From NCBI GenBank assembly GCA_030390025.1, contig CM059430.1, positions 72,664,001 to 72,728,000 on the forward strand: a stretch of 64,000 nt of DNA. Reading direction: 5' to 3'. How positions within the stretch are numbered: the stretch's first letter is position 1; each line of letters opens with the position of its first letter. The notes beneath the pieces are model-generated. The model was not told where the DNA came from, searched no databases, and worked only from the letters and a program-made list of their open reading frames with translations. The stretch comes from Squalus acanthias (lineage: Eukaryota). The translations under genes and the position numbers were made by a program. Positions 1 through 19,900 of this stretch are shown piece by piece.

Positions 1-2575
1 CCCTTTACTACAAGGTTATTAATTAACCCGTTTTCATTGAGATCATCTCTCATTATTCTAAACTCCAGAGAGTATAGGGCTAATCGACACAGTCGCGCCT
101 CAAAGGACAATCCTCTCATTCCAGGAATCAATCTAGTGAACCTTCGTTCAACCGCCTCTAAGGCAAGTATATCCTTCCTCAGTTAAGACCAAAACTGTGC
201 ACAGTACTCCAGGTGTGGTCTCAGAAAAGTCCCTTACAATTGTTGGAAGACTTCCTTACTCTTGTCCTCCAATCCCCTTGCAATAAAGGCCAACCTAATT
301 ACTTGCTGTACCTTCAAGCTAACTTTCATTTACGAGGACACCTAAATCTCTCTGAACACCAACATTTAATAATTTATCACCATTTGAAAAATATCCTGTT
401 TTTCTATTCTTCAAACAAAAGTGAATAACCTCACATTTCCCTCATTATACTTCATCTGCCACCTTACTGCCCACTCACTTAACCTATCTATATCCTTTTG
501 CAACCTCTTTGTGCTCTCCTCACAGCTCACTTTCCCACCTACCTTCGCATCATCAGCAATCTTGAATACTTTACACTCGGTCTCTTCATCTAAGTCATTA
601 ATGTGGATTGTAAATAATGGAGCCCTATGCACTGATCCTTGTGGCACCGCAATAGTTGCAGCCTGCCAACCTGAAAATGACCCGTTTATCGCTACTCTGC
701 TTTCTGTCTGTTAACCGTTCATCTAACCATGATAATATCACCCCAACCGCATGAGCCCTTATCTTGTGTAACAGCCTTTCATGTGACACCTTATCGAACG
801 CCATTTGGAAATCCAAATATACCACATCCGCAGCTTCCCCTTTATCTATCCTGATAACGACATCCTCAAAAAACTCTAATAAATTTGTCAAACACGATTT
901 CCCTCTCAGAAAATCATGTTTGTTCTGCCTAATCATATTATGATTTCCTAAGTGCCCTGTTACCACTTCCTTAATAATGGATTCCAGCATTTTCCCAACG
1001 ACTGATATCAGGCTAACTGTTCTCTCTGCAACTAGCAAAATACTGCGGATGCTGGAAATCTGAAATAACAACATAAAATGCTGGAAACACTCATCAGGTC
1101 AGGCAGCATCGGGGAGAGAGAAACAGAATCAACGTTTCGGGTCGAGGATGAAGTTCTGACAAAGGGTTCTCGACCCAAAACGTTGACTCTGTTTCTCTCT
1201 CCTCGATGCTGCCTAACCTTTTGAGTGTTTCCAGCATTTTCTGTTGTTTTAAATGTTCTATCTCCCTCCTTTCTTGAATAGTGGGGTTACATTTGCTACC
1301 TTTCCAATCCATTGGTACCGTTCTCGAATCTAATGAATTCTGGAAGATCACAGCCTATGCATCCACTATCTCTGGAGGCACCTCTTTCGAACCCGACAGT
1401 GTAGGCTGTCAGGCCCAGGAGATTTGTCAGCTATTAGTCCTATTCGTTTCTCAAGTACTATTTTTCTCGACTGATATTAATTACTTTAGGTTCCTCACTG
1501 CTATTAGCCCCTTGGTTCCCCACTATTGTTGGTATGCTTCTTGTGTCTTCTACTGTGAAGACAGATACAACATAATTGTTTAAAATCTCAGCCATTTCCT
1601 TATTCCCATTAGGTTTCCTCCTGTCTCTGCTCTAAGGGACGAACGCTTACTTTTGCTACTCTCTTCCTTTTTACATACATTGCAATCTGTTTTTTTTATA
1701 TTTCTTGCTGGTTTACTCTCATATTCTATTTTCTCCATTTTTATTCATTGTTGGTCATCCTTTGCTGGTTTCGAAAGCTTTCCCAATCCCCTACTACATT
1801 TTGCAACTTTAAAAGTCTCTTCTTTTAATCTAATACTATCCTTAACTTATATAGTTTGCCATGGATGGATCACTTTTCCCGTGGAGTTTTTATTTCTCAA
1901 TAGGATGTATATCATTCAGAATTTTGGAATATTTCTTCAAATGATTGTCACTGCTAATCTACCATCATACCTTTTAATCTAATTTCCCAATCTACCTTAG
2001 CCAACTCACCCCTCATATCTGTGTAATTGGTTTTATTTAAGTTTAAGATTCTGGTTTCGGACTGAAGTCTTTCACTCTCAAACTCAACGTGAAATTATGT
2101 CATATTCTGATCACTCTTCCCCATATAATATTTTACTATGAGATTACTAATTTACCGTGTGTCATTACCAATACAAGATTTAAAATAGCCCGTTCCTTGT
2201 TGGTTCCATGATGTATTGTTCTAAGATACTGTCTCGAATGCATTCCACAAACTCGTCCTCCAGACTACATTTGCCAATTTGATTTGCCCAGTCTATATGA
2301 AGATTAAAGTATCCCACGATTACTGCATTACCTTTGCTACAAACTCCTATTATTACTACGCTGTCCAACGGTACAGCTACTGTTATGGGTACGATAAACT
2401 ACTTTCATCAGTGTTTTTTGCCCCATGTTACTTCTTATCTCCACCGATACTGAATCTACCTTCTGATTTTCCGAGCCAAGATCCTTTCTCACTACTGTTA
2501 TGTTATCCTGTATTATTCGGGCCACCCCTCGTTTTCTATTATGCCTATCTTTTCGAGGGAGACGAACAGGTCCAT
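1..2575 (-). mobile_element. Decayed CR1 LINE ORF2 (APE endonuclease to RT)
   Basis: Fragments GKSCLTNLLEFFEDV, VYLDFQMAFDKVSH, PQGSV..FTIHINDLD, KIADDAKVGG and EQYIMEPTR, with many stops and frameshifts. Confidence 0.9.
1028..1253. mobile_element. Palindromic Penelope-type short insertion with decayed hammerhead motif
   Basis: Inverted arms of about 70 bp (1075-1147 vs 1169-1240). Near-TSD TGTTCTCTCT/TGTTCTATCT at 1018-1027 and 1254-1263. Same family as the copies at 25376, 34428 and 37476. Confidence 0.75.
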
Positions 2576-2579
2576 AAAT

Positions 2580-4235
2580 ATATGAAGGCATTTAAGATAG
2601 GAAAGGGGGAGAAAATTTGTAAACTAATTCAACCAGGAGGGAATAAAACCCCCGCTCTAGATGGATTGCATCCGTGCATATTAATTGAAATTAGGGAGGA
2701 GATAGCAGAGGCACTATTGTATATATATTCATTACAAATTCATTAGAAAGTGGAATATTGCCTGAGGACTACTGAATAGCTAATGTGATGCCTAGATTTA
2801 AAAAGGGAGCTAGAACAAGTTCAGGAAAATATAGATCAATTTGCTTAACGTAGGTAAGATATTGGAAACTTTACTCAAACATGCAACAGAAAAACATCCA
2901 GAAACCTAAAATATAATAACGTGTAGTCACCACGGATTCCAAAAGTGAAGCTCAGGCTTGACCAACGTTATTGAATTATTTGAAGAAGTAACAGAAAATG
3001 TAGTAAGGGTAATGGAGTAATATATTTGGATAAAAAAAAACCTTCGATAAGGTATGGCATAGTACACGCATGACGAAGCTCGGGGCATGTGGAATCGGGT
3101 GCAAGTAGCAGAATGGCTAGCAAGCTGGCGACAAAAAATAAAACAGAGAGTAGGTGTTAAATGTAATTAAACCGATTGGCAAAAATTGGAAAGTGATGTT
3201 CCAGAAGGATCAGTGCTATGACCACTGTTGTTCACCATTTACATAAACAATTTGGACTCGGGAATTGGAAGCACGATTTCAAAATTTGCGGATGACACCA
3301 ATTTGCGGGGCGGGGTGTAATTAATACAGAGGAGGACTGTGACAAAATACAGGAAGACATTAATAAACTTTCAGAATGGGCGTGTAATTGGCAACTGAAC
3401 GTCAATATAGCTAAGTGCGATGTGGTATATTTTGTTAGGAAGAATAAGGAGGCTACATACTCCTTTGCAAATAATTAAACGGGATCGAAGAACAGAGGGA
3501 TGGGGGCACAGATACAGCAATCACTATAAGTAGCGGCACAGGTTAATAAGGCCATAGAAAAACAAACAAAGCACAGGGGTTCACTTCTAGAGTGATGGAA
3601 TTAAAAAGCAGTGAAGTTATTTTAAACTTGTATAGAACCTTGGTTACAGCACACTTGGAGTACTATGAACAGTTCTGGTCTCCATATTATAAAAACGATA
3701 TAGAGGCACTGGAGAAGGTGCAAAAAAGATTCACTAGAATGCTATCAGATATGTGAGGTTATACCTATCGGGAAAGATTGAATTGGCTGGGGATCTTTTC
3801 TCTTAAAAAGAGAAGACTGAGCGGTGACCTGATAGAGGTCTTTAAGATTATGAAAGGGTTTGATAGGGTAGACGTAGAGAAGGTCCTTCCACTTACGGCG
3901 AGACGAGAACAGGGGGCCATAAATATAAGATAGTCACTAATAAATCCAAAAAGGAAATCGGGAGAAACCTATTTACCCAGAGAGTGGTTAGAACGTTCAA
4001 CTAGCTACTGCAAGTAATAGTTGAGGCGACTAGCATAGATGCATTTAAGAGGAGGCTAGATAAACACATGAGGGCGAAAGGAATAGAAGGATATGGTGAT
4101 GGAGTTAGATGAAGTAGGGTGGGAAGAAACTCCCGTGGAGTATAAACACCGACATGGTCCTGTTGGGCCGAATGACCTGTTCCTTCGCTATAAATACTAT
4201 GTAATACTGCTCTGTAATACTATGTAACACTATAT
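2580..4235 (+). mobile_element. CR1 LINE 3' portion (RT to 3' UTR)
   Basis: Reads KFADDT (aaatttgcggatgacacc), LEYYEQFWSP and KRRLSGDLIEV. Ends in a TACTATGTAA-type tandem tail at about 4195-4235. Confidence 0.88.
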
Positions 4236-4572
4236 AACAGAACTGATCCACACTAACTGGCCTCATCGACTCCCATATGACCAGACAAGGGCCTACCATT
4301 TCCTTTGTTCCCACTTGGAACCTATGAATATTAAAGCATTGATTCCTTCATTTTAAAGGGATTGCAGATTTCAAGAATAGGTGCAGTCTCCAGATACCAA
4401 TGTCTCTCGGTCATTAAAATCACCAGCTCCTTCCTCCCATTCCAACAAATGAAAATACGGTTTATAAACACTTCATTAAATCCAGCTAGATGTGGTCTTC
4501 AGACACCAGGATGGCCAGCTTCATGTAATTGTAACATCACTGGCCATTTGGTGGTGATTATACAATCCCGGA

Positions 4573-4707
4573 TTATGCGCTTTGCTTGTTTATGCTGATC
4601 TCCGCATACTCCGCTCTGGTTTCCTGCTGTTTCCTTCTTCCCGTTTTCTGAGAAGCGGCGAGATCCAGAGACGCGTAAGTCAGTTTACCATCTGTCCCTT
4701 GCTTGGT
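4573..4707 (-). CDS. Exon 7, terminal cytoplasmic exon with ITIM LTYASL and AEYAEI
   Basis: Acceptor gcttccacag|. Translates to TKQGTDGKLTYASLDLAASQKTGRRKQQETRAEYAEISINKQSA*. Confidence 0.9.
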   Translation of the reverse strand, partial: TKQGTDGKLTYASLDLAASQKTGRRKQQETRAEYAEISINKQSA

Positions 4708-7700
4708 CTGTGGAAGCAACAATGAAACATCAGGAGGACCTGTTACTTACACTACCTGTTCCAGGCTGTCAATGCAGGTTACAAAGGTCAAACACCAGTA
4801 CCGGACCATTCTTTTTTGGAATGGGTTACTGCGTTACTCGGCCGTACCTGGGCATAGACGGTACGCTCTTCCTTATTTCTGGGTTTCCCAGTTTTCCTTT
4901 GCCCGCTGAGGTTGAGAGCAGCGTAAGACGGATTCCCCGCCTCTCCTCCTCGCACGGTCTGAGGAGAGGTTTTGGAGAAATATTAGCTGTACATCACATC
5001 ACAAACAGCACATTAAAGTACCACTAAAGGCCAAACACATTGATCAAAGATTGAGTAAGTATGATCAGTGCATATCATTGCTGTAAATGGCATTGTCCGT
5101 GTGATAATGGTCAGATAAGGACAACGGATGCAACTATTTCCCAGCCGGTGCCATTACCCTGAATATTCTTCCACAATCCGTGTTAGCAGAGCTCATACTG
5201 GCTTAGTGTGCCAAGGCCTGACCCGTGTGCTACTGAACAGTTAACACACATCCAAGTTCTGAGTGTGCTGTTTACAAAAAGGAAAATTACCCTCAGTGGC
5301 TCTGGGCCCAGGAAGGGGTGGCGGATTTTTCCCAGGGGACCAACCCCGATCTGCACTCAGAGATCCGGCTGAACAGTTCACGGGTGCGGATGTTGGATGG
5401 GAACAGGACCGAGCTCGGTTATGAGGCTTCACGCGGCTGAATAGTTGCGCAACCCGCACTGACCAGATGCAACTATCAACAACGGTGTCTGCGAGAACTT
5501 GAGGGTTGCATGAATCACCGCTGCACTGAGGGGTCAAATGCTATACCATCGGAGGTGGAGAGGACATGGTGAAACATTGGACCCGGCAGTGATCACCGTG
5601 TGCTCCCCGGTGACCGGGAGCCGTTCTGATGTACCACTGATACCGGTATAACTAAGTTGTAAATGTACAGAACATATGCAACAGCAATCTATTTCTCGTT
5701 GCACCAACATGAAACTGACCTGCTCCTCGAAGTGATCGGGTATATCCTCACTAATCTCTGTACCTGATAGAGAACGAAATTTACATCAGTGATCAATTTC
5801 ATCATGGTCCGGTACGTGACCGCCAAAAGTTACCCAACATTCAATCAAATTGACCAGATTCACCGACCAGTAGAAAGGGGTCTGAGCAGTCACGGTATTC
5901 CCATTATTGGAATATAACCCTTCACATCCAATTCTATTGGTGGGTGAGATGGGGACCATTTTACGGCCGAACACCCCATGTTACGTCCCACCATTTGGTT
6001 GACGAGCTCTGCCCCGCCCGACAGTCCTGCATTAGCGGCATTTATTGTACAAAATTCGCAGCACCACCGTCAGTTAGTGTAAAGAACTAAAATACCGTTT
6101 AGCTTTATGTTCCAACGTGGTGAAATTATTCTGACGGTTCTGTTGGATTTGAGGTCCTGCCCTAGTCACAACACTGGCCCCAGGAGCAATAGACACTGTT
6201 CTCAAAATCTATATCCCAGTCTGGACCCTTTACCCTTTCCGGTGCCGCGGTATTGAACTGTAACTGGACGATAAAACCCAATTCTGAACCAGGATCGTGT
6301 CACGTCTTACCTTCAGTTCTGTCTAATTTGCATCGCTTGACAAGAATTGCCAGCAGTAGAAGTATTAGCACGCCCGCTGCACATCCAGACACCAAGAGGT
6401 AGGGGAAAGTACCGTCAGCTAAAATGGTTAGAGAAAAGGGAATGTTAGCATTTTACAAAGGCGATGATGCTAAATAATTAAACAACGTCAGATATCGGGC
6501 AGCACCGACACGTCACTTTCACCCTCTCTCACGGAGATACTAGGGAGACTCCATCTTTTCTTTTATCCTGATACCTTATTGTCTGTGCATTAAAAGACCA
6601 AAACACAGAGTAAAAACACAGGGAATTTCCGTGTGTGATAATATCAGCATTAATTCTGATTAATTGTCATATTTTAACCAATGATTAGGCAGCTTTCTTC
6701 ATGATGTGTGCATGAATATATGTATGTGGGATTCACTACCTTTGGGTGTGTCTCCAAGTTTCTCTCTCTCTACGTGTATCTTTGCGCAGGAAAAACACCC
6801 AAACGGATAAAAAAAACCTTGGCCAATTCGGGAAAAGGAGTTATGGGAAATTTACTCGAAGCGATGAGGGACGAGTTCCAGTAACATTGGCCATTAGACA
6901 CATCACGCAGGACTCAACCTGCCTTTTGTACTCAGCGATATTATTTGAGGGATTTGTTGGGTTTCAGGTCTGGCCCTCGGCACAACATTGGATCTCGGGG
7001 CGGTGCCAGAGGACTGGAGGATTGCAAATATTACACCCCTCTTTAAAAAAGGGGAGAGGGATAAAGCCGACAACTACAGGCCAGTCAGCCTAACGTCTGT
7101 GCTGGGGACACATTTAGAGACAATACTTAGGGACAAAATTAACTGGAAAAGTAGGGTTTAATAAATGAAATTCAGCATGGATTTGTTAAAGGCAAATTGG
7201 ATTTGACTAGCTTGATTGAGTTATTTGATGAATTAACGGAGAGGGTTTATGTTGTGTATATGGACTTTGAAAAGGCTTTTGACAACGCTTCACATAATAG
7301 ACTTGTTAGCAAAATTAAAGCCCATGGGATTAAAGGGACAGTGGCACAATGGATGCAAAATTGGCAAAGCGACAGAAAGCAGAGAGCAGTGCTGAACAGT
7401 TGTTTTTCAGACTGGAGGGATGTATGCAGTGATGTTCCCCAGCGGTCATTATTCGACCACTGCTCTTTTTGATATATATTAATGACATGGACTTGGATAT
7501 AGAGGGCATAATTAGAATGTTTGCAGACAACACCAAACTCGGAAATGTAGTAAACAATGAGGAGGATAATAATAGACTTCAAGAGGACCGAGACAGATTG
7601 GTAAAATGGTCGGTCACGTGGTGGATAAAATTTACAGAGAAATGTGAAGTGATACATTTTGATAGGAAGAATGAGGAGAGGCAATATGAACTAAATTGTA

Positions 7701-10700
7701 GAATCTTAAATGGAGACCAGAACAGATAGACCAGGGGGTATATGTAGACAACTATTTCATGGTGACAGGACAAGTTCAGAAGGCTGTTAAAATAGCATAT
7801 GGGATTCTTGACTTGATTAATCGAGGATTAGTATTCAAAAGCAAGGAAGTTATGGTCAACCTTAACAACACACGTGTTAGGTCTCAGCTAGAGTATTGTA
7901 TCCAATTCTGGACAGCACAGTTAAGTAAGAATGTCAAGGCATTATAGAGGATGCAGAGAAAATTTACTAGAATGCTACCAGGGATGAGGGACTTCAATTA
8001 TGTGGTGAGACTGGAGAAGCTGGGGATGTTCTTTTTAGAGTAGGGAAGATTAAGAGGAGATTTGTAGAGTGTTCATGAAGGGTTTCGATAGAGCAAATAA
8101 GGAGAAACTGTTTCCAGAGGGCAGAAGGGTCTGAAACCAGAGGACACAGATTTCAGTTGATTGGCAAAAGAACCAGAGGCGACATGAGGACATTTTTTTA
8201 CACAGAAAGTTTTTGTGATCTGGAATGCACTGCCTGAATGGCTGGTGGAAGCAGATCCAATAGTATCATTCAAAAGAGAATTGGATAAATACTTGAAGTG
8301 AAAACATTTACAGGGCTATGGGGAAAGTGCAGGTGAATGGGAAATCGGATAGCTCTATCAAAGAGCCGGCACAGGTACAATGGACAGAATGGCCTACTTC
8401 TGTGCTTTATCTGCGCTGATATCCACCTCGTCCGGCTTCTTTAAACATTTACAGCGAAAGCGCGCTCACTGCACGAGCCTTCGGCATATTCCAAATGTCA
8501 GTGACATTCTGGGAGAAGACAAATCTCCTGACATCTAAAGCAGTTCTGTGCATTCATGTCTCGTCCTTCTCCCCAATTCATCCAATTCAAATACTCTATG
8601 CACGTGTACACAATCTAGCCCCTTCACCATTCAATTAAATCTCCCCGAATTCTCGCTTTTTTAAAGTATAAATGCCCAGACCTTTGAACCTATCGTGATG
8701 ATTTAGGGTTTTTAAACTAGGCATCAGTCTAGTGGCTCTCCTCTGTTCCGTTTCCCAGTGCCTCTATACCTCTCACCATATGAGGGACTAGAACTGGTCA
8801 CAGTGTTGTAGATGAGGGCTGACTACCTCAAGGATATTAGAGGACTCTTTACTTGTATTGGTTTGCCCCTGCTATACTTCCCAATGCTCTATTTTTATTT
8901 GTCTATAGCCTCTCCGCAGTGGTCGTGGACCTTTCGATATTCCTACACTATATCAGCCACGTCTCTTTCCTTCTCAACATCGTTTAATTCAGAGCCTAGA
9001 ACACTATATACATGCTTGGCATTAGCCATGCACACGTGTATTATATTACGTATATCTACGTTAAATGTAATCTGCCAGATGCAAGCTCATTTCCCCCATC
9101 GCATCGAGATGAGATTGTAACCCTTTTTGCTCCTCAACGGTTCTGACACTTGCACAGATATACCATCAGTGAACTTGCGACGCCTTCATCCAAATCAGTG
9201 GTATAAATCGTGAAGTGTAACGGCCATACACCGATCTCTAATGGACCCAACTGTAGCCGGCCTCTACATGGAGTCACTGACATTAACGACAGCACTCTGT
9301 CTATGAGAATTACAACCAATTCCCTAATCAAACCAGGATCTTCCTTCTAATCACACATCATTCCATCTTACTTCGTGCCATACTTTCCGGCCCATCGTCA
9401 AAAGCTTTTTGACACTGCAATGAACACAGTAACCCCCTTCACACTCACTCCATTGATAATGTTCTGGTGAAAGATTAGTGGAGACAGAAAGTCCGTGGCA
9501 GGCCCTTATATATAACACTGATACAGTTCAGGGCAGTAATGAGAATCTGAGGCTCTTACCCGAATCACGAACCGTGTGGCTGTCGTAGGCTGGAGCCCGG
9601 AGAGTGACATGAGACACCTGACAGATATAAACCGACCAGTTCTCCACAGGGCTGAGGGAGCTGGAAACTTGATACAATCCCACCTCGTTCCGTTTTTCCG
9701 TCGTGTTTATCCCAGATGTAATTTCGGTGCCATTTTTATACCAAATGATGTTAAACTCCTCCGGGAAAAAGTCAGCCGTTGTACAGAGGAGTTTGAGGGA
9801 TGGAGAGGGCTGGCGGGTAATCTTCACAGGTGTTGGCGGCACTGGAAAAAAGTAAAGGGTAATTAGTTAAAATCGCTACTCGTGTATTACATTTGGAAAG
9901 GGAAAGAATAGCCACCGAGAAAGGAGAACATGTTGCAGCTGCAGTTTTCTTTAATGGGGAAAAGTCATCGCCATGTTTAACGAACACGTGGTTTGCTTGA
10001 AGCAGTACATGGCAATGTTTCTTTCGTTTTTTGTCTTTATCCAGCACTCAGTCAGGGGAAGGCTCCTCGTCTGTGCACTGAAACGAATTTCAGTCCCAAT
10101 TAAACAGAACACGTCTTGTGCGAGCTCTCAAAACCCTCTGCCCGTGTTTCACTGTGATTTCGACATTTGGTTTTAAATAGGTTTCAGCGTTGCTAACAGG
10201 GAGACATTACATTCTGTAATATGGTTTCACAGACTAGGTGTTAACTTAATGCAACAGCATGAAGAAAATTCCTTTCCAGTCTGGGACTTGTCAAGGTCTA
10301 ACCTGAACGAAGCTATCTGCTCCAGAGCTCACTTAGTCGGTTCATTTCCGAGATAATGTACAGGTCTTGACTCCGGTTCGCGCTCTGCGTGAATAATTTC
10401 AAGTCTTCGTTACTGTTCAGATGTCACGAATAAAAAGATAAACAGGCCAAAGAAATATCAAAATACCCATGCTCCCAATATCTTTCAGTTACGGAGATTC
10501 GTGTCCCTCATTCCTTGCGGATCAAGTAAATTCACTGGACTCCCCTCCTAGTTGGAGCCTTGCTGGCGCAATAAGAATCCTTATTGAGTCATTCATCTGT
10601 TAAGCGCTTTTGGGCTGAGCGTTGCTGAATTGGACTGTCTCAGTGCTCCTTCTCCAATTGTTACCTTCCGGTTAAATTACAGAAGTTGAAGGCAGAAATA

Positions 10701-13700
10701 CACATTACCAGCCGCACTCCAAGCTCTCGATCTCAATCCAGTCCGGTGCCCTTACCCCGCATTCTTTAATATTTTGCCTCAAGTGTTAATTTCCTTTACT
10801 AGCTCTTGTGAAAATCTATCCCACGTTCTAATAACCCTTTGAGTAAAAAAAATATTCTAACCTCCCTTTATTTTTCTACAGCTAATCCTAAATTTGTGCC
10901 CCTTCATCATCAATGGTAACGCCGCTCAAACCCCTTTTACTGGGCCTGCCTTTAACTCGTTTTATCCACAGATTTAGGCCTGACATCACCAAGTAAATAC
11001 TTTTTACACCTTCTCATTGACATCATTACAGTACCCAAAAGAGCAAGCTCATTCAACACTTATTTTTTTTTTACAAGTATGTGATATAAATGGCCACATA
11101 CATGCATAGTATTACATAAGATACACGGAACAGAAACAGGCCATTCGGCCCAACCAGTCCATGCCGGCGTTTATGCTCCACTCGAACCTACTCTCGTCTT
11201 CCCTCATCTAGCTCTATCAGCATATCAGCATAACCCTCTATTCCCTTCTCCCTCATATGCTTATTTAGCCCCCTCTTAAATGCATCTATACTATTTGCCT
11301 CATTGTCCCAAACTCCTCCAACACCATCCCTGGGTATATCCTGTCCCACCGGCAGGACAGAGCCACCAGCGGTGGCGGAACAGTGGTACACAGTCGGAAG
11401 GAGTGGCCTAGGAGGCCTCAACATTGACTCTGGAACGCATGAAGTCTCATGGCTTCAGGTCAAGCATGGGCAAGGAAACCTCATGCTGATTACCACCTAC
11501 AACCATCCCTCAGCTGATGAATCAGTACTCCTCCATGTTGAACACCACTTAGAAGAAGCACTGAGAGTAGCAAGGGCACAGCATTTACTCTGGGTGGGGG
11601 AATTCAATGTCCCTCACCAAGAGTGGCTCTGTAGCACCACTACTGACCGAGCTGGCCGAGTCCTGAAGGAAATAGCTGCCAGTCTGGGCCTGCGACAGGT
11701 GGTGAGAGAACCAACACGAGGGAAAAACCTACTTGACCTCGTCCTCACCAATCTCCCTGTCGATGATGCATCTGTCCATGACAGTATTGGTAGCAGTGAC
11801 CACCGCCCAGTCATTGTGGAGACAAAGTCCCGTCTTCACACTGAGGACATCCTCCATCGTGTTGTGTGGCACTACCACCGTGCTAAATGGGATAGAGTCA
11901 GACCAGATCTAGCAGCTCAAAACTGGGCATCCATGAGGAGCTGTGGGCCATCATCTGCAGTGGAATTGTATTCCACCACAATCTGTAACCTCATGGCCCG
12001 GCATATCTCTCACTCTATCATTACCATCAAGCCAGGGGACCAACCCTGATTCAATAAGGTGTGTAGAAGATCATGCGAGGAGCAGCAACAGGCGAACCTA
12101 AAAATGAGGTGCCAACCTAGGGAAGCTGCAACACAGATTACATGCATGCTAAAAAGCAGAATCAACATGCTATAGACAGGGCAAAGTGATCCCACAGCCA
12201 ACGGATCAGATCAAAGATCTGCAGTCCTGCCATATCCAGTCGTTAATGATGGTGGACTATTAAACATCCCCATCCTCAATCATGGTGGAGCCCAGCACGT
12301 GAGTGCAATAGACAAGGCTGAAGCGTTTGCAACCATCTTCAGCCAGAAATGCCGAGTGGATGATCCATATCGTCCTGCTCCTGAGTTCCACACCATCACA
12401 GAAGCCAGTCTTCAGCCAATTTGATTAACTCCAAATGATATCAAGAAACGGCTGAGCGCACTGGATACAGCAAAGGCTGTTGGCCCCGACAACATCCCGG
12501 CTGTCGTCCTGAAGACTTGTGTTCTAGAACCAGCTGTTCCTCTAGCCAAGCTGTTCCAGTACAACTACAACACTGGCATCTATCCGAAAATGTGGAAAAC
12601 TGCCCAGTTATGTCCTGTCCACAAAAAGCAGGACAAATCCAAACCAGCCAATTATCGCCGCATCAGTCTACTCTCAATCAACAGCAAAGTGATGGAAGGT
12701 GTCATCGCCAATGCTATCAATCAGCACTTACTCACCAATAATCTGCTCATTCAAGCCCAGTTTGGGTTCCACCAAGACGACTCGGCTCCCGACCTCATTA
12801 CAGAGGTGAGGTGAAAGTGACTTCCCTTGACATCAAGACAGCATTTGACCAAGTGTGGAATCAAGGAGCCCTAGTTAAACGGAAGTCAATGGGAATCGGG
12901 GGGAAACGGTCCACTGGCTGGAGTCATACCTAGCACAAAGGAGGATGGTTCTGCTGGTTGAAGGTCAATCATCACAGCCCCAGGACATCGCTGCAGGAAT
13001 TCCTCAGGGCAGTGTCCTAGCCCAAACATCTTCAGTTGCTTCATCAATGAACTTCCCTCCAACATAAGGTCCGAAATGTGGATGTTCGCTGATGACTGCA
13101 CAGTGCTCAGCGCCATTTACAACTCCTCAGCTATTCAAGCAGTCTATGCCCGCATGCAAAAGACCTGGACGACGTTCAGGCTTGGTCTGATAAGTGAAAG
13201 GTAACGTTCGCAACACAGAAGTGCCAGGCAATGACTATCTCCAACAAGCTAGAGTTAAACCATCTCCCCTTGACATTGAACGGCATTACCTTCGGCGAAT
13301 CCCCCGCCATCAAGATCCTGGGGATCACCATTGACCAGAAACTTAACTGGACCAGCCACATAAATACTGTGGCAAAAATAGCAGGTCGGAGGCTGGGTAT
13401 TCTGCGGCGAGTGTCTCGCCTCCTGACTCCCCAAAGCCTTTCCACCATCTACAAGGCACAAGTACGGAGTGCGATGGAATACTCTCCAATTGCCTGGATG
13501 AGTGCAGCTCCAACAACACTCAAGAAGCTCAACACCATCCAGGACTAAGCAGCTCACTTGATTTGTACCCCATCCAAAACCTTCAACACTCACTCCCTCC
13601 ACCACCGGCGTACCGTGGCTGCAGTGTGTACCATCTACAAGATGCACTGCAGCAACTCGCCAAGGCTTCTTCGGCAGCATCTCTCTAACCCGCGACCTCT

Positions 13701-16327
13701 TCCACCTAGAAGGACAAGGGCAGCAGGTGCATGGGAACACCACCACCTGCAAGTTCCCCTCCAAGTCACACAACATCCTGACTTCGAAGTATATTGCCGA
13801 TCGTTCATCGTCGCTGGGTCAAAATCCTGGAACTGCCTAACAAACAACACATTGGGAGTACTTCACCACACTGACTGCACCGGTTCAAGAAGGTGGCCCA
13901 CCACCACCTTCTCAAGGGCAATTTGGAATGGGCAATAAATGCTGTCCTTGCCAGCGACGTCCACGTCCCATAAAGAAATAAAAAAACTACTCCAAGGTTC
14001 GATACAAATATGGCATAACTTCACTACTTTTCAATTCTCTCCCTCTAGAATTAAACCCTAGTGCTTGGTTTGCTTTTCTACGGCCTTGTTAACCTGTGTC
14101 GCTACTTTTAGCGATTTGTCTATTTGTACTCCGAGATCCCTTTGCTCTCCAACCCAACCCAGACCCACACCCTCCAAGTAATAAGTGACCTCCCTATTCT
14201 TCCTACCAAAATGTACTAACTCACATTTATCTGTGTTGAAATTCATTTGCCAATTATATGCCCATTCTGCAAGATTATTAATGACCTCCTGTAATTTGTT
14301 GTTGTCCTCCTCAGTATTTACTATCCCCCCAATTTGGTGTCATCCGCAAGTGTTAGATATTGTGTTTTTGATTCCAAAGTCTAAATCGTTAATTTGAATT
14401 GTGAATAACAGTGGGCCCAGCAGTGATCCTTGTGGAACACAACTACCTACATTCTGCCACTGTGAATACCTACTTTTTACTCCTACTCTCTGCTTTCTCT
14501 CTTGAAGCCAGCTAGCTATCCAATCTGCTACTTGTCCCCTGACTCTGCATTCTCTGACCTTATTCATTCATCTATTATGTGGTATCTTATCGAAAGCTTT
14601 ATGAAAATCTAGATAAACTACATCTCTTGCACGACCCTTGTCTACTGTCTCTGTTACCGTAGCAAAAAATTCAATGAGGTTGGTCAAGCAAGACTTTACC
14701 TTTTGAAATATATACTGACTATTCATTATTATATTTTTCTCTTCTAGATGTTCTTCTATTTTTTCCTTTAGTAGGGATACCATTATTTTTCCTACCATCG
14801 ATGTTGAGCTGACTGGTCTATAGTTCCCTGGACATGTTCTAGCTCCCTTCTTATATATAGGTAAAAAGTAAGCTACATGCAGTGGCTATTAGAGCAGTTC
14901 AGAGACTAGATATTCTGTGGCGAGTGGCTCTGCTGTTGAATCCCCAAAGCCTTTCCACTAACTATAAGACACTGGTCAGGAGTCTGATGGAATACTCCCC
15001 ACTTGCCAGAATGAGTACAGCTGCAATAACGCTGAAGGAGCTCGACAACATCCAGGGAAATAAAAAATTCCGCTTGATTGACAGTCCATCCACCACCTTA
15101 AACATTCACTCTCTCCACCACCGGCGTACCGTGTCTGCAGTGTGTACCATCTACAAGATGCACTGCAGCAACTCGCCAAGGCGACTTCGACAGCACCTCC
15201 CAAACCCGCGACCTCGACCACCTAGAAGGACAAGGGCGACAGGCGCATGGGAGCACCACCACCTCTAATTTCCGTCCAAGTCACACATCATCCTGACTTG
15301 GAAATATACCGCCGTTCCTTTATCATCGCTGGATCCAAATCCTGGAACTCCCTCCCTAACTGCACCGTGGGAGCACCTTCACCACATGGACTGCAGCGGT
15401 TCAAGGAGCCAGCTCACCACCACCTTCTCAAAGGCAACTGAGGATGGACTGTAAATGCTGGCCTTGTCAGCGATGCCCACATCCCGAGAATGATTTAAAA
15501 CAAATAAAGGATAATTCAATAGCTGATTCAGAATAAGAGAACAATGATTGACTGAACTCAGACATCCTGAGTTGTGTCCGGTAATCGGTGCTGCTCCGTG
15601 AGAACAGACAGGATTCACTGCAAATAGGGAGAAAGCAACTACACCGAACCGAACAGAGGGAAAATACCTTGCTGCTCTTTAATTCAATATTTTCTAATCT
15701 GCACCTGTATAATTTTACCTTGGTCCACTAGCCCCTCAGTGACACTCACCATGTACTATAAGCTCAGTCCCATTCCCGTTGGAAATCTTTCCGCTCCAGT
15801 CTCTCACGCTGCAATAATAGACTCCGGAGTCCTGGAAACTCACATGCAGCAGATGGAACTCGGCAGATCCTTGCTTGAAAGGTATCATTTTTTTCCTTTT
15901 GTCTGCAGTTGGATCCAAAGTCCGATCCTGGCCAGCTCTCCGCCAATAAACATCCACCAATGCGGTGGGATCGAAAAGCGGGGCAGAGCAATACATGGTC
16001 ACATTTGCGCCTTTTACCGGAGTCAGCCGGGCAGGGAACTGAAGCACCGAGAGAGAGGCCCCGTCACTTACTGTCAGAAATAAACACAAACACGGGTTAT
16101 AGGCGGTAATAATGATCGGGAGGATGAAAAGAGAGGAAATAACGCTGCAGAAATATTACGAAAGAAAACGAAGAAATTGCACAATAAACATTGAACAGAT
16201 GTGGCCTCTACAAAGCTCGTTGATTTTTTATTTGCACTTTCCGATTTATGAGACAGATATAAATATATAAACCTGTGTAAATAATGCCCAGGGCTAAGAG
16301 GTACGGCAGCACATCAAGTACAGGCAT
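4573..16327 (-). CDS. Spliced gene (7 coding exons, 1056 nt, 351 aa): IgSF receptor with VJ-type V domain + C1 domain + TM + ITIM/ITSM-like tail (SIRPalpha-like / NKp30-like VJ-C1 receptor)
   Basis: Manually assembled exons 16327-16273, 16070-15750, 9841-9560, 6418-6311, 5763-5720, 4958-4848 and 4707-4573. All introns are GT..AG with phases 1,1,1,1,0,0, giving an open frame from ATG to TAA. Orthology is not assignable from sequence alone. Confidence 0.9.
4848..4958 (-). CDS. Exon 6, cytoplasmic: TVRGGEAGNPSYAALNLSGQRKTGKPRNKEERTVYAQ
   Basis: Acceptor ctctcctcag|, donor CAG|gtacgg. Two Tyr motifs (SYAAL, TVYAQ). Confidence 0.85.
5720..5763 (-). CDS. Exon 5, short acidic cytoplasmic exon GTEISEDIPDHFEEQ
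   Basis: Acceptor ttctctatcag|, donor CAG|gtcagt. Its 44 nt convert phase 1 to phase 0, as needed to join exon 6. Confidence 0.75.
6311..6418 (-). CDS. Exon 4, transmembrane: ADGTFPYLLVSGCAAGVLILLLLAILVKRCKLDRTE
   Basis: Acceptor ccattttag|, donor GAAG|gtaaga. Hydrophobic stretch of about 21 aa with no charged residue, followed by KRCK. Not in the ORF track. Confidence 0.9.
6985..8410 (+). mobile_element. CR1 LINE RT and 3' end, in intron 3
   Basis: VYMDFEKAFD, IYINDMD, MFADNTKLG and QLEYCIQFW fragments, plus a CR1-type 3' UTR. Confidence 0.9.
8690..9480 (-). mobile_element. Very old CR1-like RT remnant
   Basis: PLHFTIYTTDLDEG resembles PLLFTIYINDLDEG; otherwise highly degenerate. Confidence 0.5.
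9560..9841 (-). CDS. Exon 3, Ig C1-set domain
   Basis: Acceptor ttttttccag|, donor TCGG|gtaaga. Motifs LLCTTADFFPEEFNIIWYKNG, LYQVSSSL and YICQVSH (C1 signature YxCxVxH). Confidence 0.95.
11110..11300 (-). mobile_element. CR1 3' end (same family as 2580-4235); host of the LINE inserted at 11305
   Basis: Close reverse-complement similarity to 4030-4200; EANSIDAFKRGLNKHMREKGIEGY. Confidence 0.8.
11305..13986 (+). mobile_element. Second non-LTR LINE family (APE-RT, CR1/L2 group), near-complete ORF2 with A-tail
   Basis: APE motifs WVGEFNV, PTRGKNLLDLVLTN and GSSDH. RT motifs NYRRISLLS and MFADD. C-terminus HHRRTVAAVCTIYKMH; 3' end AATAAATGCTG...AAAAAA. Confidence 0.9.
13987..14860 (-). mobile_element. 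CR1 RT fragment (continuation of the element split at 11300)
   Basis: SCLTNLIEFF, VYLDFHKAFDKIPH and VPQGSLLGPLLFTIQINDLD. Confidence 0.88.
14880..15505 (+). mobile_element. 3' fragment of the second LINE family
   Basis: PQSLSTNYKTLVRSLMEYSPL and HHRRTVSAVCTIYKMH; same 3' UTR as 13900-13986. Confidence 0.9.
15750..16070 (-). CDS. Exon 2, Ig V-set domain with in-exon J-like G strand
   Basis: Acceptor tttctgacag|, donor CATG|gtgagt. Motifs LSVLQ, VTMYC, VYWRR, DSGVYYC and NGNGTELIV. Matches ORF 15736..16089. Confidence 0.95.
16273..16327 (-). CDS. Exon 1, signal peptide MPVLDVLPYLLALGIIYT
   Basis: ATG at 16327, hydrophobic leader, phase-1 donor ACAG|gtttat, 202-bp intron before the V exon. 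This is typical IgSF leader layout. Confidence 0.8.
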
Positions 16328-16999
16328 TCTGAGCAAAAGCGATGAACTCGATCACTCGTTTGCTATAAGTCAGCGGGAAACACTGAAGGGTGTGGTGATG
16401 GAGAGATGTGACGATAATAAAGCATTGAGCGTGTTGCCGTATGGCGCACCACAACATATCTGAAGCTTCAATCTCAATGAACTGGTTTCAGTTTTACGTC
16501 AGAGCTGTGAACACACAGTAAAAGTTAAAGCGACCCAGTTTTAATGCTGATCCAGAGAATATGGAACATTTTTGCATCACGTGGAAGTTTCCGAATTGAT
16601 ACATTTCTTGGCTAATCGCAAAGTTGCCCAACTTTTGCGGTTACGTACGTGCAGGTGCGGTGAAAGCGGTCTGTGACTGGCTCCAATGACCCATTTCCCT
16701 TGCATCGTTTGGCCTCAGAGTTCCGGGGCTTTGGTGTCGAACCTGAACCGAAGGACGGGACAACATCGTGTTGTTTATTGAAGTGGTCCCTTGGTATCGA
16801 GGCTGCTGCACAGCAACTGAAGATAGTCCGTCACACATTCAGCAGACAAGGAGCTTTGACATTGATAGGTGCCCTGGATATCAACCAGATTGATAGAAAT
16901 GATTTAGTGGAGCCCCAGGCCAGATTATATGATACGTTACTCAAAGGTTAGTTCCATTTTCTAACCCTTTGGGGGAAGGGATTCTAATTTATGTCCAGT

Positions 17000-19900
17000 G
17001 GATGACTGCTGCTAACTGGCTAAGCTGCTGGTGACAGGCTAGTGCTGCTGGCAATTGCATAATGTTGCTGGGGATTGGGTGATGCTGCTGGGGATTGGAT
17101 GTTTCTGCTTGTGACGATGCGGCTGCTGGTGACAAGCTAATGCTGTTGGCGACGGGGTGATGTTGCTATGGTCATTGAGTGAGGCTGCTGGTGATTGGCT
17201 ATTTCTGCTGGTAACGGAGCGTTTCTGCTGGTAACGGCGCTGCTGCTGGTGATTGTGTGATGCTCCTGGTGACTGGCTAATTCTACTGGTGACTGGGCGA
17301 TGCTGCTGGTGACTGGATGATACAGCTGCTGGTGATTGGGAAGTTGCTGTGGAGTGGGGTTTTCAGCTGGTGACTGGGTGATGGAGCTGGTGACCAGGCA
17401 TTGATGTTGTTGACTGGGTGTTGCTCCTAGTGACTGGGTGATGCTGCTGGTGACCGTGTGTTTCTGATGTAGACTGGTTGCTGCTAGTGGTGACACAGAC
17501 TTTCTGCTGGTGTCTAGGTGATGTTGCTGGTGGTTGACTCATGTTGCTGTTTGGTGAATGGCTTTTTCTATTCATTACTGGGTGTTTTTGCTGGCGATGG
17601 TCCCGCTGCTGGTGACTGGATGATGGTGCTCCTAGTGATTGGGTAATGCTGCTGGTGATTGGGAAATGCTGCTGGTGAATGGGAGATGCTGCTGGTGAAT
17701 GCGAGATGCTGCTGGTGACGGTATGATGCTGCTGGTGATGCTGCTGGTGAATGGGAGATGCTGCTGGTGACTGGGTGATGCTGCTGGCAACTCGGAGATG
17801 CTGATGGTGATTGTGAAACGCTGCTGGTGATTGGGAGATGCTGCTGTTGATTGGGAGATGCTGCTGGTGACGGGATGCTGCTGCTGGTGATTAGCTAATG
17901 CTGCTGGTGACTGGGAGATGGTGCTGGTGATTGGGAGATTCTGCTGGTGACAGGGTGATGCTGCTGGTAACTGGGATATGGTACTGGTGACTGGGAGATG
18001 CTACTGGTGACTGGGAGGTGTTGCTGGTGACAGGGAGAAGCTACTGGTGAGGCTGCTGGAAGCTGGGAGATTCTGCTGGTGACTGGGAGATTCTGCTGGT
18101 GACTGCGTGATGCTGCTGGTTACTGGAGGCTGCTGCTGATGACTGGGAGATTTTGCTGTTGAGGCTTCTGGTGACTGGGTAATTCTGCTGGTAACATTGA
18201 GATGCTGCTGGTGACCGGGTGAAGCTGCTGGTGAGGCTGCTGGCGACTGGATAATGCTTCTGGTGACTGGGAGATGCTGCTGGTGATGAGTGATGCTGCT
18301 GGTGACTGGGAGATGCTGCTGGTGACTGGGAGATGCTGCTGGTGACTAAGGGATGCTGTGAACTGGGAGATTTTGCTGGTGATGCTGTTGGTGACTGGGA
18401 AATGCTGCTGATAGCATTGAGAGGCTGCTGGTGACTGGGTGATGCTGCTGGTGACTGGAAGATGCTGCTTGTAACTGGGAGATGTTGCTTGTGACTGGGA
18501 GATGTTGCTTCTGACTGGGAGATGTTGCTTATGACTGGGAGATGTTGCTTGTGACTGGGAAATGCTGTTGGTGAGGCTGCTGGTGACTGGCTGATGCTGC
18601 TGGTGACGGGGAGATGCTGCTGGTGACTGGGAGATTCTGCTGTTTACTTAGAGATGCTGCTGGTGATGCTGATGACTGGGTGATGCTGCTGGTGACTGGG
18701 AGACGCTGCTGATGAATGGGAGATGCTGCTGGTGACTGGGAGACGTGGCTGGTGACTGTGACATGATGCTGGTGACTAGGGGATGCTGCTGGTGATTGGG
18801 AGATGGTGCTGGTGATTGTGTGATGCCGCTGATGACTGTATGAAGCTGCTGGTGATGGTGCTGGTGATTGGGTGATGCTGTTGTTGACTGGAAGATGCTG
18901 CTGGTGATGAGAGATGCTGCTGGTGAATCGGAGATGCTTCTGCTGACTGGGAAATGGTGCTGGTGAATGGGAGATGTTGCTGTTGACTGGAAGATGCTGC
19001 TGGTGATGAGAGTTGCTGCTGGTGAATGGGAGATGCTGCTGATGATGGTCTTTGTGATTGGGTGAAGCTGCGGTTGACTGGAAGAAGCTGCTGCTGGTGA
19101 GAGATGCTGCTGGTGAGAGATGCTGCGGGTGAGTGGGAGATGCTGCTGGTGAAGCTGCTAGTGACTGGGAAATGCTGCTGGTGAGGACACTGGTGACTGG
19201 GTGTTGCTGCTGGTGACGGGGAGATGCTGCTGGTGACAGGAAGATGCTGCTGGTGAATGTGAGATGCTGCTGGTGACTGGGAAATGCTGCTGGTGATGCT
19301 GATTGTGACTGGGAGATGCTGCTGACGACCGGTTGATGCTGCTGGTGAACTGGATATGCTGCTAGTGACTGGGAGATGTTGCTGGTGACTGGGAGATTCA
19401 TCTGGTGGCTGGGAGATGCTGCTGGTGATTTGGAGATTCTGCTGGTGACTGGGAGATGCTGCTGGTGACTGGGAGATTCTGCTGGTGACTGGGAGATGCT
19501 GCTGGTGACTGGGAGATTCTGCTGGTGACTGGAAGATGCTGCTGGTGACTGGGAGATTCTGCTGGTGACTGAGAGATGCTGCTGGTGACTGGGAGATTCT
19601 GCTGGTGACTGGGAGACGCTGCTGGTGACTGGGAGATTCTGCTGGTGACTGGGAGATGCTGCTGGTGACTAGTTGATGCTGCTGGTGACTGGAAGAAGCT
19701 GCTGCTGGTGAGAGATGCTGCTGGTGAGAGATGCTGCGGGTGAGTGGGAGATGCTGCTGGTGAAGCTGCTAGTGACTGGGAAATGCTGCTGGTGAGGACA
19801 CTGGTGACTGGGTGTTGCTGCTGGTGACGGGGAGATGCTGCTGGTGACAGGAAGATGCTGCTGGTGAATGTGAGATGCTGCTGGTGACTGGGAAATGCTG

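What the first reader, a model, noticed from the sequence alone, without database searches (positions are those of the whole stretch)
4573..16327. Non-rearranging VJ-C1 antigen-receptor-like chain wired to an inhibitory tail
Seen: one exon encodes a complete V domain including a J-like diglycine G strand (YYCSVRDWSGKISNGNGTELIV). It is followed by exactly one true C1-set domain, a TM without a charged residue and four Tyr motifs. No RSS splits V from J. Known: V(J)+single C1 is the layout of TCR and Ig light chains; C1 domains are restricted to a few jawed-vertebrate families (Ig, TCR, MHC, B2M, tapasin, SIRP, some B7); the V end resembles NKp30 (AELHI..D...YVC..GNGTRLVV); mammalian SIRPalpha has V-C1-C1. 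Inference: this is a germline VJ-C1 inhibitory receptor with the architecture proposed for the pre-RAG ancestor of antigen receptors, and may be an uncharacterised chondrichthyan family.
Basis: partly seen in the sequence, partly recalled or inferred. Interest (0 to 1): 0.85.

Follow-up and report, generated by a model that had tools for sequence, protein, structure and literature searches.

The report
Shark SIRP-like V-C1 inhibitory receptor gene
This is an intact-looking gene for an immune-cell surface receptor with one antibody-like variable domain, one constant domain and an inhibitory-type tail; it belongs to a large shark, ray and chimaera gene family that gene databases already predict but that I did not find described in papers.

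Summary
A seven-exon gene lies on the minus strand at 16327..4573. Its exons are a split leader, one exon encoding V plus a J-like G strand, one C1-set exon, an uncharged TM exon and three cytoplasmic exons. One cytoplasmic exon (5763..5720) is needed to keep the frame. All introns are GT..AG and the total is 351 codons. The 64 kb window holds no RSS at the V exon and no other Ig exon.

The gene is not an orphan. Its six main exon peptides are colinear with RefSeq models of 358-360 aa in two other sharks (V 78-80% identical). All 65 family-profile hits are chondrichthyan. They carry mixed automatic names: SHPS-1/SIRPalpha-like, tapasin-related-like, NCR3LG1-like, Ig lambda-like. The family includes paired short-tailed forms with an Arg in the TM.

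SIRP orthology is not shown. The family profile scores Ig light chains, SIRPalpha and UrIg2 about equally. Only one of the four Tyr motifs is a canonical ITIM.

No RNA support was obtained: the four runs laid gave zero depth on exons C1 to cyt3.

First readers of this scan noted the same kind of gene on other DNA of this genome.

Verdict: a real gene and a new variant of a known kind. The "pre-RAG ancestor" reading is untested.

The parts
16273..16327 (-). Leader exon (55 nt). ATG at 16327, MPVLDVLPYLLALGIIYT plus 1 nt; donor ACAG|gt, phase 1. This is the split leader.
   Evidence: Translation and splice context. It resembles the N-terminus of P0151, MPVLNMLRYLLALGISYS.
15750..16070 (-). VJ exon (321 nt). 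It holds the end of the leader, a V-set domain and a J-like G strand (NGNGTELIV) in one exon, with no RSS. The NGT in the J-like motif is also an N-glycosylation sequon.
   Evidence: Pfam V-set E 5.5e-9. AF2 model pLDDT 92.9. Foldseek neighbours are VHH, VNAR, NKp30, V-lambda, PD-1 and TCR V. No heptamer. 80% identical to P0157 and 78% to P0159.
9842..15749 (-). Intron 2 (5.9 kb), filled with LINE endonuclease/RT fragments. It holds no Ig exon.
   Evidence: ORFs; Exo_endo_phos_2 at 11303-12049; no Ig pattern.
9560..9841 (-). C1-set exon (282 nt, phase 1-1).
   Evidence: Pfam C1-set E 2.9e-12. AF2 model pLDDT 94.5. All 49 listed Foldseek rows are MHC class II beta2 domains, TMq 0.77-0.87. Hallmarks FFP, xVxH and a 13-residue Cys-Trp gap are present.
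6311..6418 (-). Stalk, TM and stop-transfer exon (108 nt, phase 1-1). The TM core is uncharged and contains a GCAAG (GxxxG-type) motif.
   Evidence: 69% identical to P0159 residues 225-259.
5720..5763 (-). Small cytoplasmic exon cyt1 (44 nt, phase 1 to 0), TEISEDIPDHFEEQ.
   Evidence: tblastn of P0003 and P0042; sequence and splice sites; 86% identical to P0151.
4848..4958 (-). Cytoplasmic exon cyt2 (111 nt): NPSYAALNL ... RTVYAQ.
   Evidence: 73% identical to P0157 residues 273-309.
4573..4707 (-). Cytoplasmic exon cyt3 (135 nt including the TAA stop): KLTYASLDL (canonical ITIM) ... AEYAEISI. It is a tandem duplicate of the cyt2 module.
   Evidence: 71% identical to P0159 residues 312-352. 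cyt2 against cyt3: 36% over 36 aa, ungapped, E 2e-8.

Best explanation
The locus is an intact-looking gene for the inhibitory form of a non-rearranging VJ-C1 immunoglobulin-superfamily receptor. It is one member of a large, paired (inhibitory / short-tailed, TM-Arg) multigene family of cartilaginous fishes. In design the family most resembles SIRP.

Proposed working:
- The membrane-distal V domain, with CDR-like loops and a J-like G strand, binds a still unknown ligand.
- The single C1 domain is the stalk and probably a cis-pairing surface.
- The uncharged TM recruits no ITAM adaptor.
- After ligand engagement the two tandem Tyr modules of the tail are phosphorylated. Each module is YxxL followed 23 residues later by xxYAxx.
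- The phosphorylated modules dock tandem-SH2 phosphatases (SHP-1/SHP-2) and dampen activation.

Shown: the exon anatomy, the domain types, family membership, and paired forms in a related shark. Inferred: expression, the ligand, dimerisation, phosphatase recruitment, and the cell type.
For: - Gene model: seven exons with GT..AG borders, phases 1,1,1,1,0,0, and 1056 nt giving 351 codons plus a stop.
- Domain types: V-set and C1-set by Pfam and by confident AF2 models with Foldseek neighbours.
- Colinearity: each of the six exon peptides matches consecutive segments of P0159 (Heptranchias perlo, 360 aa) and P0157 (Heterodontus francisci, 358 aa), with nothing extra between them.
- Family size: the V exon gives 249 hits at E <= 1e-3 and 50 at E <= 1e-10 in the representative library.
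- Family range: 65 of 65 family-profile hits are chondrichthyan, nearly all with precomputed C1-set.
- Placement: the window V lies in a 21-row clade (SH-aLRT 96) of shark and ray sequences.
- Paired forms: P0159 (long tail) and P0175 (8-residue tail, TM NFCRFLLGL...) are 86% identical over 228 ectodomain residues and then diverge. Several other short-tailed members share the R-F/L-[IL]-LG TM motif.
- Tail duplication: cyt2 against cyt3 gives E 2e-8.
- SIRP resemblance: many members carry the SHPS-1-like automatic name. The family profile hits SIRPalpha 2wng at 89.8 bits.
Against: - No RNA evidence. Two runs of one study hold 0.39 and 0.35 of 72 sampled words of 15700-16400, and their kind is only guessed to be RNA. 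In those runs and two others depth is zero on exons C1, TM and cyt1-3. Only LINE parts are covered, at 90-95% likeness.
- Only one of the four Tyr motifs is a canonical ITIM. The -2 residues are P, T, L and A, and the second motif ends in T after splicing.
- No AATAAA or ATTAAA lies within 2 kb downstream of the stop.
- The ligand, cell type and dimer state are unknown.
- The RefSeq models used for colinearity are themselves predictions.
Confidence: 0.75

Rival explanations
1. It is a true (co-)orthologue of tetrapod SIRPalpha: the same gene lineage, binding CD47, in which cartilaginous fishes have one C1 domain and tetrapods two.
For: - It has the V-C1 order, an uncharged TM and a four-Tyr tail built of two modules.
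- Many family members are auto-named SHPS-1-like or SIRPbeta-1-like.
- The family profile hits SIRPalpha at 89.8 bits and SIRPgamma at 80.5 bits.
- The pairing of inhibitory and TM-charged forms resembles SIRPalpha/SIRPbeta.
- PMC9652883 (passages read) says the origins of SIRPs are unknown and lists them only for mammals, birds and lizards, so a fish homologue is an open slot.
Against: - Per-stretch scores of the same profile are no better for SIRPalpha (48.9 and 41.6 bits) than for Ig light chains (52.3-59.3) or UrIg2 (43.7).
- No SIRP V domain is among the best 60 solved-structure hits of the V exon. TCR alpha V, light-chain V, PD-1 and VNAR are.
- There is one C1, not two.
- Automatic names within the family are inconsistent.
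- No synteny could be examined.
Confidence: 0.2
2. It is a surviving relative of the un-split VJ-C1 gene that the RAG transposon invaded.
For: - VJ lies in one exon with a split leader, followed by one C1 and a TM, which is the layout of a TCR or light chain.
- By sequence the V exon's best solved relatives include TCR alpha V and light-chain V.
- The family occurs in chimaera as well as in sharks and rays, so it is old.
- A weak anuran V-C1 relative exists: P0127, E 1.1e-6.
- Unchecked notes of this scan place paralogues inside Ig light-chain arrays.
Against:
- PMC2785349 already notes that one cannot tell descent from a precursor from descent from an antigen receptor itself.
- Sharks are known (recalled, not from a call) to carry germline-joined Ig genes, so a joined VJ can be secondary.
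- The J-like motif lacks the F/W of FGXG.
- UrIg/UrIg2 are the published candidates (PMC12227049).
Confidence: 0.15
3. It is a silent or decaying copy in a birth-and-death gene family: it looks intact but is not expressed.
For: - Depth is zero on five of its exons in four runs.
- No canonical poly(A) signal lies within 2 kb of the stop.
- The introns are loaded with transposable elements, and a 4.5-kb minisatellite starts 0.7 kb upstream of the ATG.
- Scan notes report paralogues with a dead C1 exon (unchecked).
Against: - All 351 codons are open across seven exons and all twelve splice sites are canonical.
- The peptides are 60-80% identical to orthologues throughout, including the short cyt1 exon.
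- 0.39 and 0.35 of the V/leader words occur in two small contig sets of transcriptome-like size.
- Contigs show presence, not absence.
Confidence: 0.1

Closest known systems
SIRPalpha / SIRP family (mammals, birds, lizards)
   Same: An N-terminal V-set domain with a J-like G strand is followed by C1-set domain(s) that carry the same three hallmarks. The TM is uncharged and the tail has four Tyr in two modules. Sister forms with a charged TM residue exist. Many family members carry the automatic name SHPS-1-like.
   Different: It has one C1 instead of two. By sequence the V domain is no closer to SIRP V than to TCR, IgL or PD-1 V. Only one motif is a canonical ITIM. The gene family is much larger. 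CD47 binding and synteny are untested.
UrIg and UrIg2 of elasmobranchs (PMC12227049)
   Same: Both are non-rearranging genes with VJ in a single exon, a split leader and C1-type domains, in the same animals. UrIg2 (9dmx) is among the top solved-structure hits of the family profile at 100.1 bits.
   Different: UrIg has three C1 domains and is secreted. UrIg2 has nine or more C1 domains. Neither is described there with an ITIM tail or as a paired multigene family: the paper has 0 occurrences of 'ITIM' and 'SIRP'.
NKp30 (NCR3)
   Same: The V domain is compact with a GNGT...L.V G strand. NKp30 structures rank 3, 8, 13 and 20 among Foldseek hits of the V model.
   Different: As recalled (not from a call), NKp30 has no C domain and has a charged TM that couples to ITAM adaptors. 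This gene has a C1 domain, an uncharged TM and a Tyr-motif tail.
Ig light chains and TCR chains
   Same: The V(J) + one C1 layout and the split leader are shared. Light chains give the highest per-stretch scores with the family profile, 52-59 bits.
   Different: There is no RSS and no separate J segment. The gene has TM and signalling-tail exons of its own. Identity in V is only about 20-25%.
Anuran V-C1-TM genes, auto-named SIRPbeta-1-like, tapasin-related or NCR3-like (P0127 and relatives)
   Same: They have a V domain with GNGTRL(I/V)V, then a C1-set domain and a TM.
   Different: They are only distantly similar (E 1.1e-6, 36% in V). They have a short tail and a Lys in the TM. Only anuran relatives were found.

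Membership tests
SIRP family | N-terminal V-set domain with a J-like G strand | tested here: met
SIRP family | Two membrane-proximal C1-set domains (SIRPalpha, beta, gamma; PMC2785349) | tested here: not met
   One C1 exon only. No further Ig exon lies in the 64 kb. Orthologous models of 358-360 aa are colinear.
SIRP family | C1 hallmarks: (F/Y)(F/Y/H)P, xVxH after the F-strand Cys, and 13 residues from Cys(B) to Trp(C) | tested here: met
   FFP, CQVSH and 13 residues are seen in the translation. The criteria come from PMC2785349.
SIRP family | V and C1 sequences group with SIRP rather than with other V-C1 proteins | tested here: inconclusive
   The family profile scores SIRPalpha at 48.9 and 41.6 bits per stretch, light chains at 52-59 and UrIg2 at 43.7. 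SIRP V is absent from the best 60 hits of the V exon. No tree with SIRP sequences was possible.
SIRP family | Inhibitory tail: four Tyr forming ITIMs that bind SHP-1/SHP-2 | tested here: inconclusive
   Four Tyr lie in two duplicated modules, but only LTYASL fits the ITIM consensus. Binding is not testable here.
SIRP family | Binds CD47; lies in the conserved SIRP chromosomal neighbourhood | not testable with these tools
Rearranging antigen-receptor chains (IgL, TCR) | V and J are separate segments flanked by RSS | tested here: not met
   V through J is one open exon. No heptamer lies in 15601-16200.
NKp30 (NCR3) | A single V-type domain with no C domain, and a charged TM residue (definition recalled) | tested here: not met
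   A C1 exon is present. The TM has no charged residue.
UrIg / UrIg2 | A VJ exon followed by three (UrIg) or nine or more (UrIg2) C1 domains (PMC12227049, sections read) | tested here: not met
   There is a single C1. The VJ single exon and split leader are shared.
Unnamed chondrichthyan VJ-C1-TM family (RefSeq models, mixed automatic names) | Colinear leader-VJ-C1-TM-tail architecture and sequence clustering | tested here: met
   One search shows colinearity and 60-80% identity. One search places the V exon in an SH-aLRT 96 clade of 21 rows. The C1 tree gave no starred set. In one search, 65 of 65 hits were chondrichthyan.

The most novel reading that the evidence does not exclude
Cartilaginous fishes carry a large, ancient family of germline VJ + single C1 + TM chains. 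The chains come in inhibitory and adaptor-coupled forms and pair through their C1 domains into TCR-like dimers. The family is a sister lineage of the chain that RAG split. It would then be a living, non-rearranging, paired 'proto-TCR' system, with SIRP as its tetrapod remnant.
Probability: 0.12. Interest if true: 0.85.

Novelty: new variant of a known kind. Interest (0 to 1): 0.5.

Why it matters
C1-set domains are confined to antigen receptors, MHC and a few associated proteins. Germline genes with an un-split VJ exon next to a C1 domain are actively sought as clues to how Ig and TCR arose; UrIg and UrIg2 are recent examples.

This gene shows the minimal TCR/light-chain layout (VJ, one C1, TM) wired to an inhibitory-type tail. 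It belongs to a family spread over sharks, rays and chimaera, with paired adaptor-type forms.

If the family proves to be the fish counterpart of SIRP, it would fill the gap noted in PMC9652883, which says the origins of SIRPs are unknown. If it proves sister to Ig/TCR chains, it bears on the pre-RAG receptor. Either outcome can be reached with trees, synteny and expression data that already exist publicly.

The interest is tempered. The models are already in RefSeq. The design is a variation on SIRP. Nothing functional is shown here.

Tried and rejected
RNA support
- The look-up of sequencing runs on 15700-16400 gave 5 rows. None is on record as RNA.
- Read laying on 4050-9950 with X1-X4 gave zero depth on all five exons in that stretch. 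The only joints were inside LINE copies. No splice junction could be confirmed or refuted.

Outgroups for V and C1 trees
- The C1-region search with P0003 returned only 6 family members out of 31 candidates.
- The P0127 search returned only anuran relatives.

Synteny
- The window holds no conserved flanking gene.

Structure re-ranking
- The pdb_via and pdb_via_wide libraries were not on the machine.

Arg-TM exon
- I searched the window for an alternative Arg-TM exon like that of P0175. None was found. The only hit is a weak read-through of the C1 donor.

Rejected readings
- NKp30, UrIg/UrIg2, NITR and B7 membership are rejected. For NITR the second domain here is C1-set. For B7 the V has a J-like GxG strand; that criterion is recalled.

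Papers
- Fu et al. 2019 (PRARP), Ohta et al. 2019 and Flajnik et al. 2023 (UrIg) are not held. I know them only from reference lists and recall, and they may mention such genes.
- I did not ask for supplements. Table S1 and fig. S1 of PMC12227049 could list related models.

Atlas look-up
- The look-up gave only generic V-set clusters (antigen-receptor fragment, PD-1, NITR-type). I treated it as a lead and drew nothing from it.


Full report
**What is there**

The gene lies on the minus strand. I read each candidate exon with its flanks and checked borders and lengths in a script.

| Exon | Coordinates | Length | Notes |
|---|---|---|---|
| leader | 16327..16273 | 55 nt | MPVLDVLPYLLALGIIYT, |
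| VJ | 16070..15750 | 321 nt | |
| C1 | 9841..9560 | 282 nt | |
| TM | 6418..6311 | 108 nt | |
| cyt1 | 5763..5720 | 44 nt | |
| cyt2 | 4958..4848 | 111 nt | |
| cyt3 | 4707..4573 | 135 nt | includes the TAA stop |

- All six introns are GT..AG.
- The intron phases are 1,1,1,1,0,0.
- The sum is 1056 nt, that is 351 codons plus the stop.
Everything below was done exon by exon.

**Observation check**

V exon
- The exon runs uninterrupted from FR1 to YYCSVRDWSGKISNGNGTELIVH.
- Pfam calls it V-set (E 5.5e-9).

C1 exon
- Pfam calls it C1-set (E 2.9e-12, 47 bits against a cutoff of 21).
- It carries the three C1 hallmarks set out by Hatherley et al. 2009 (PMC2785349, passages read).
- These are FFP at the BC loop, xVxH after the F-strand Cys (CQVSH), and exactly 13 residues between Cys and Trp.

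Structure models
- AF2 models of the two exons, each with a family alignment, are confident: pLDDT 92.9 and 94.5.
- All 49 listed Foldseek rows for the C1 model are MHC class II beta2 domains.
- The V model's neighbours are VHH, shark VNAR, NKp30 (rank 3), V-lambda, Ig-beta, PD-1 and TCR V. Their E-values all lie between 1e-8 and 3e-7, so this ranking does not discriminate.

Other checks
- No RSS is present.
- tblastn of the two exon peptides found no other Ig-like exon in the 64 kb. A six-frame pattern scan found none either.
- The TM core has no charged residue.

- The cyt1 exon is needed to keep the frame. I found it only by tblastn with a homologue.
- The second Tyr motif reads TVYAQ|T after splicing.
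- Only LTYASL is a consensus ITIM.

**It is a member of a large family**

- A HMMER scan of 1.84 billion representatives with the V exon gave 249 hits at E <= 1e-3 and 50 at E <= 1e-10. The best were 53-68% identical.
- Look-ups named them as RefSeq models from Scyliorhinus, Cetorhinus, Heterodontus, Mobula, Mustelus, Heptranchias, Carcharodon and Callorhinchus.
- A profile of six full-length members found 65 proteins at E <= 1e-3 among 7171 candidates. All 65 are from sharks, rays or chimaera.
- Their automatic names are inconsistent: SHPS-1-like, tapasin-related-like, NCR3LG1-like, Ig lambda-1-like, CD276 homolog, and MHC class I- or II-like.
- That search only sees relatives that share exact 5-mers, so the absence of other vertebrates there proves nothing.
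- One anuran V-C1-TM gene, auto-named SIRPbeta-1-like, tapasin-related-like or NCR3-like, is a weak V hit: P0127, E 1.1e-6. Only anuran relatives of it were found.

**Support for the exon model without RNA**

- Each of the six exon peptides aligns to consecutive parts of P0159 (H. perlo, 360 aa): V 21-125 at 78%, C1 127-218, TM 225-259, cyt1 261-274, cyt2 276-311, cyt3 312-352.
- The same holds for P0157 (H. francisci, 358 aa, V 80%). Nothing lies in between.
- In a V-domain tree of 71 rows the window sits in a clade of 21 shark and ray rows with SH-aLRT 96.
- The C1 tree of 74 rows gave no starred set that holds the window.
- These trees have about 100 columns and a quick search, so only this coarse placement is claimed.
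- RefSeq also predicts C1-skipping isoforms: P0004 against P0151, P0006 against P0007, and P0001. The phase 1-1 C1 exon would allow this. I could not verify them.

**Paired forms**

- In H. perlo the long-tailed P0159 and the short-tailed P0175 are 86% identical over 228 ectodomain residues and then diverge.
- P0175 has a TM reading NFCRFLLGL... and an 8-residue tail.
- The same R-F/L-[IL]-LG motif recurs in other short-tailed members.
- This is the signature of paired inhibitory/activating receptors.
- The window itself holds no such exon.
- An unchecked scan note reports a TM exon with an Arg 11.8 kb beyond the window's end.

**Tail**

- cyt2 and cyt3 are duplicates: 36% over 36 residues, ungapped, E 2e-8.
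- Each carries YxxL followed 23 residues later by a second Tyr.
- From recall, SIRPalpha's tail has a similar two-module layout with similar spacing. I did not hold its sequence, so this is a resemblance and not a test.

**Is it SIRP?**

- The family profile against all solved structures gives these totals: the 'IgA1 heavy chain' entry 2rcj_C 100.3 bits, UrIg2 100.1, SIRPalpha 89.8, CD276 80.8 and SIRPgamma 80.5.
- Per stretch the scores are close:

| Target | Bits per stretch |
|---|---|
| lambda V-end + C | 53.4 |
| kappa chains | 52.3 and 59.3 |
| SIRPalpha d1-end + d2 | 48.9 |
| SIRPalpha d3 | 41.6 |
| UrIg2 | 43.7, 25.3, 27.3 |

- By sequence the V exon's best solved relatives are contactin and Robo Ig domains, TCR alpha V, light-chain V, TCR gamma, PD-1 and VNAR. 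Neither SIRP nor NKp30 is in the best 60.
- The ectodomain is therefore about equally far from light chains, SIRP and UrIg2. Orthology with SIRP is neither shown nor excluded.
- Membership fails on the two-C1 criterion.

**RNA**

- Two contig sets of one 2017 study hold 0.39 and 0.35 of the 72 sampled words of 15700-16400. A third set, from another organism label, holds 0.19. None is on record as RNA.
- I laid those three and a fourth on 4050-9950. All gave zero depth in every bin containing the C1, TM, cyt1, cyt2 and cyt3 exons.
- Only 4050-4246 and about 6808-8580, with traces to 8777 and at 9172-9368, were covered. These are LINE copies, mostly at 90-95% likeness.
- This result counts against my reading or is at best neutral. 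The V/leader part may be present in those data without the downstream exons. I cannot say whether that reflects low expression, another transcript form, or DNA in the runs.

**Literature**

- UrIg (VJ + 3 C1, secreted) and UrIg2 (VJ + 9 or more C1, TM) are the published non-rearranging shark genes (PMC12227049, introduction and UrIg2 section read). That paper has no occurrence of 'SIRP' or 'ITIM'.
- PMC2785349 proposed the SIRP link to antigen-receptor origins.
- PMC9652883 (passages read) lists SIRPs for mammals, birds and lizards and says their origins remain unknown.
- Six searches found no paper describing a SIRP-like or VJ-C1-ITIM family in cartilaginous fish.
- The library lacks most J Immunol papers, including three that may bear on this.

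**Scan context**

- First readers noted many VJ-C1-TM-ITIM genes elsewhere in this genome. Some are on the same piece, 0.6 Mb beyond and 10-11 Mb before this window. Some are on other pieces, and some are said to lie inside Ig light-chain arrays.
- These notes are unchecked. They agree with the multigene picture from the protein databases.

**Verdict**

- The locus is a real, intact-looking gene.
- It is a new variant of a known kind: a SIRP-like, non-rearranging V-C1 paired receptor with a single C1.
- It is already predicted in databases, but I did not find it in print.
- Interest is 0.5.

Noticed in passing
window 17024-21552: A 4.5-kb minisatellite with a 20-nt unit (GCTGCTGGTGATTGGGTGAT-like), about 230 copies at 73% matches, and strong GC skew. 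It starts about 0.7 kb upstream of the gene's ATG. On the minus strand it gives long artefactual ORFs rich in S, P, Q and H.
   Followed up: partly
window 27403-28568 (+), 41966-42610 (+), 53094-53837 (-): Three copies or fragments of a PIF/Harbinger-type transposase (Pfam DDE_Tnp_4, E 7e-14 to 4e-21).
   Followed up: partly
window 625-1074, 6988-7947, 11303-13548, 23673-24906, 34755-36891, 45890-48140, 54395-56538: Many LINE fragments: Exo_endo_phos_2 at 11303-12049 and 45890-46714, and RVT_1 at 54395-55123. Two lie inside introns 2 and 3 of the receptor gene. Related copies are abundant in the contig sets laid.
   Followed up: partly
RefSeq models P0004/P0151 (Heterodontus), P0006/P0007 (Mobula), P0001 (Scyliorhinus): Predicted isoforms join the VJ exon directly to the TM exon and skip C1. 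The phase 1-1 C1 exon of the window gene would allow the same. If real, the receptor would toggle between V-C1 and V-only forms.
   Followed up: no
window 15750-15790 (J-like motif) and family alignments A3/A4: The J-like motif is NG(T/N)G(S/T) in most members. An N-glycosylation sequon (NGT) therefore sits on the G-strand bulge, which forms the V-V interface in Ig and TCR. A glycan there could prevent antibody-like V pairing.
   Followed up: no
window 6311-6418 (TM exon) and family members: A Cys inside a small-residue GCAAG / GCAGGG (GxxxG-type) motif recurs in the TM of many long-tailed members listed. It may be a TM dimerisation surface. No stalk Cys for an interchain disulfide is present.
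   Followed up: no
window 15700-16400 against 4050-9950 in runs X1 and X2: The same two contig sets hold about 0.35-0.39 of the sampled words of the leader/V stretch but nothing of the five downstream exons. This is unexplained. It could reflect a V-only transcript, fragmentary assembly, or DNA in the runs.
   Followed up: partly
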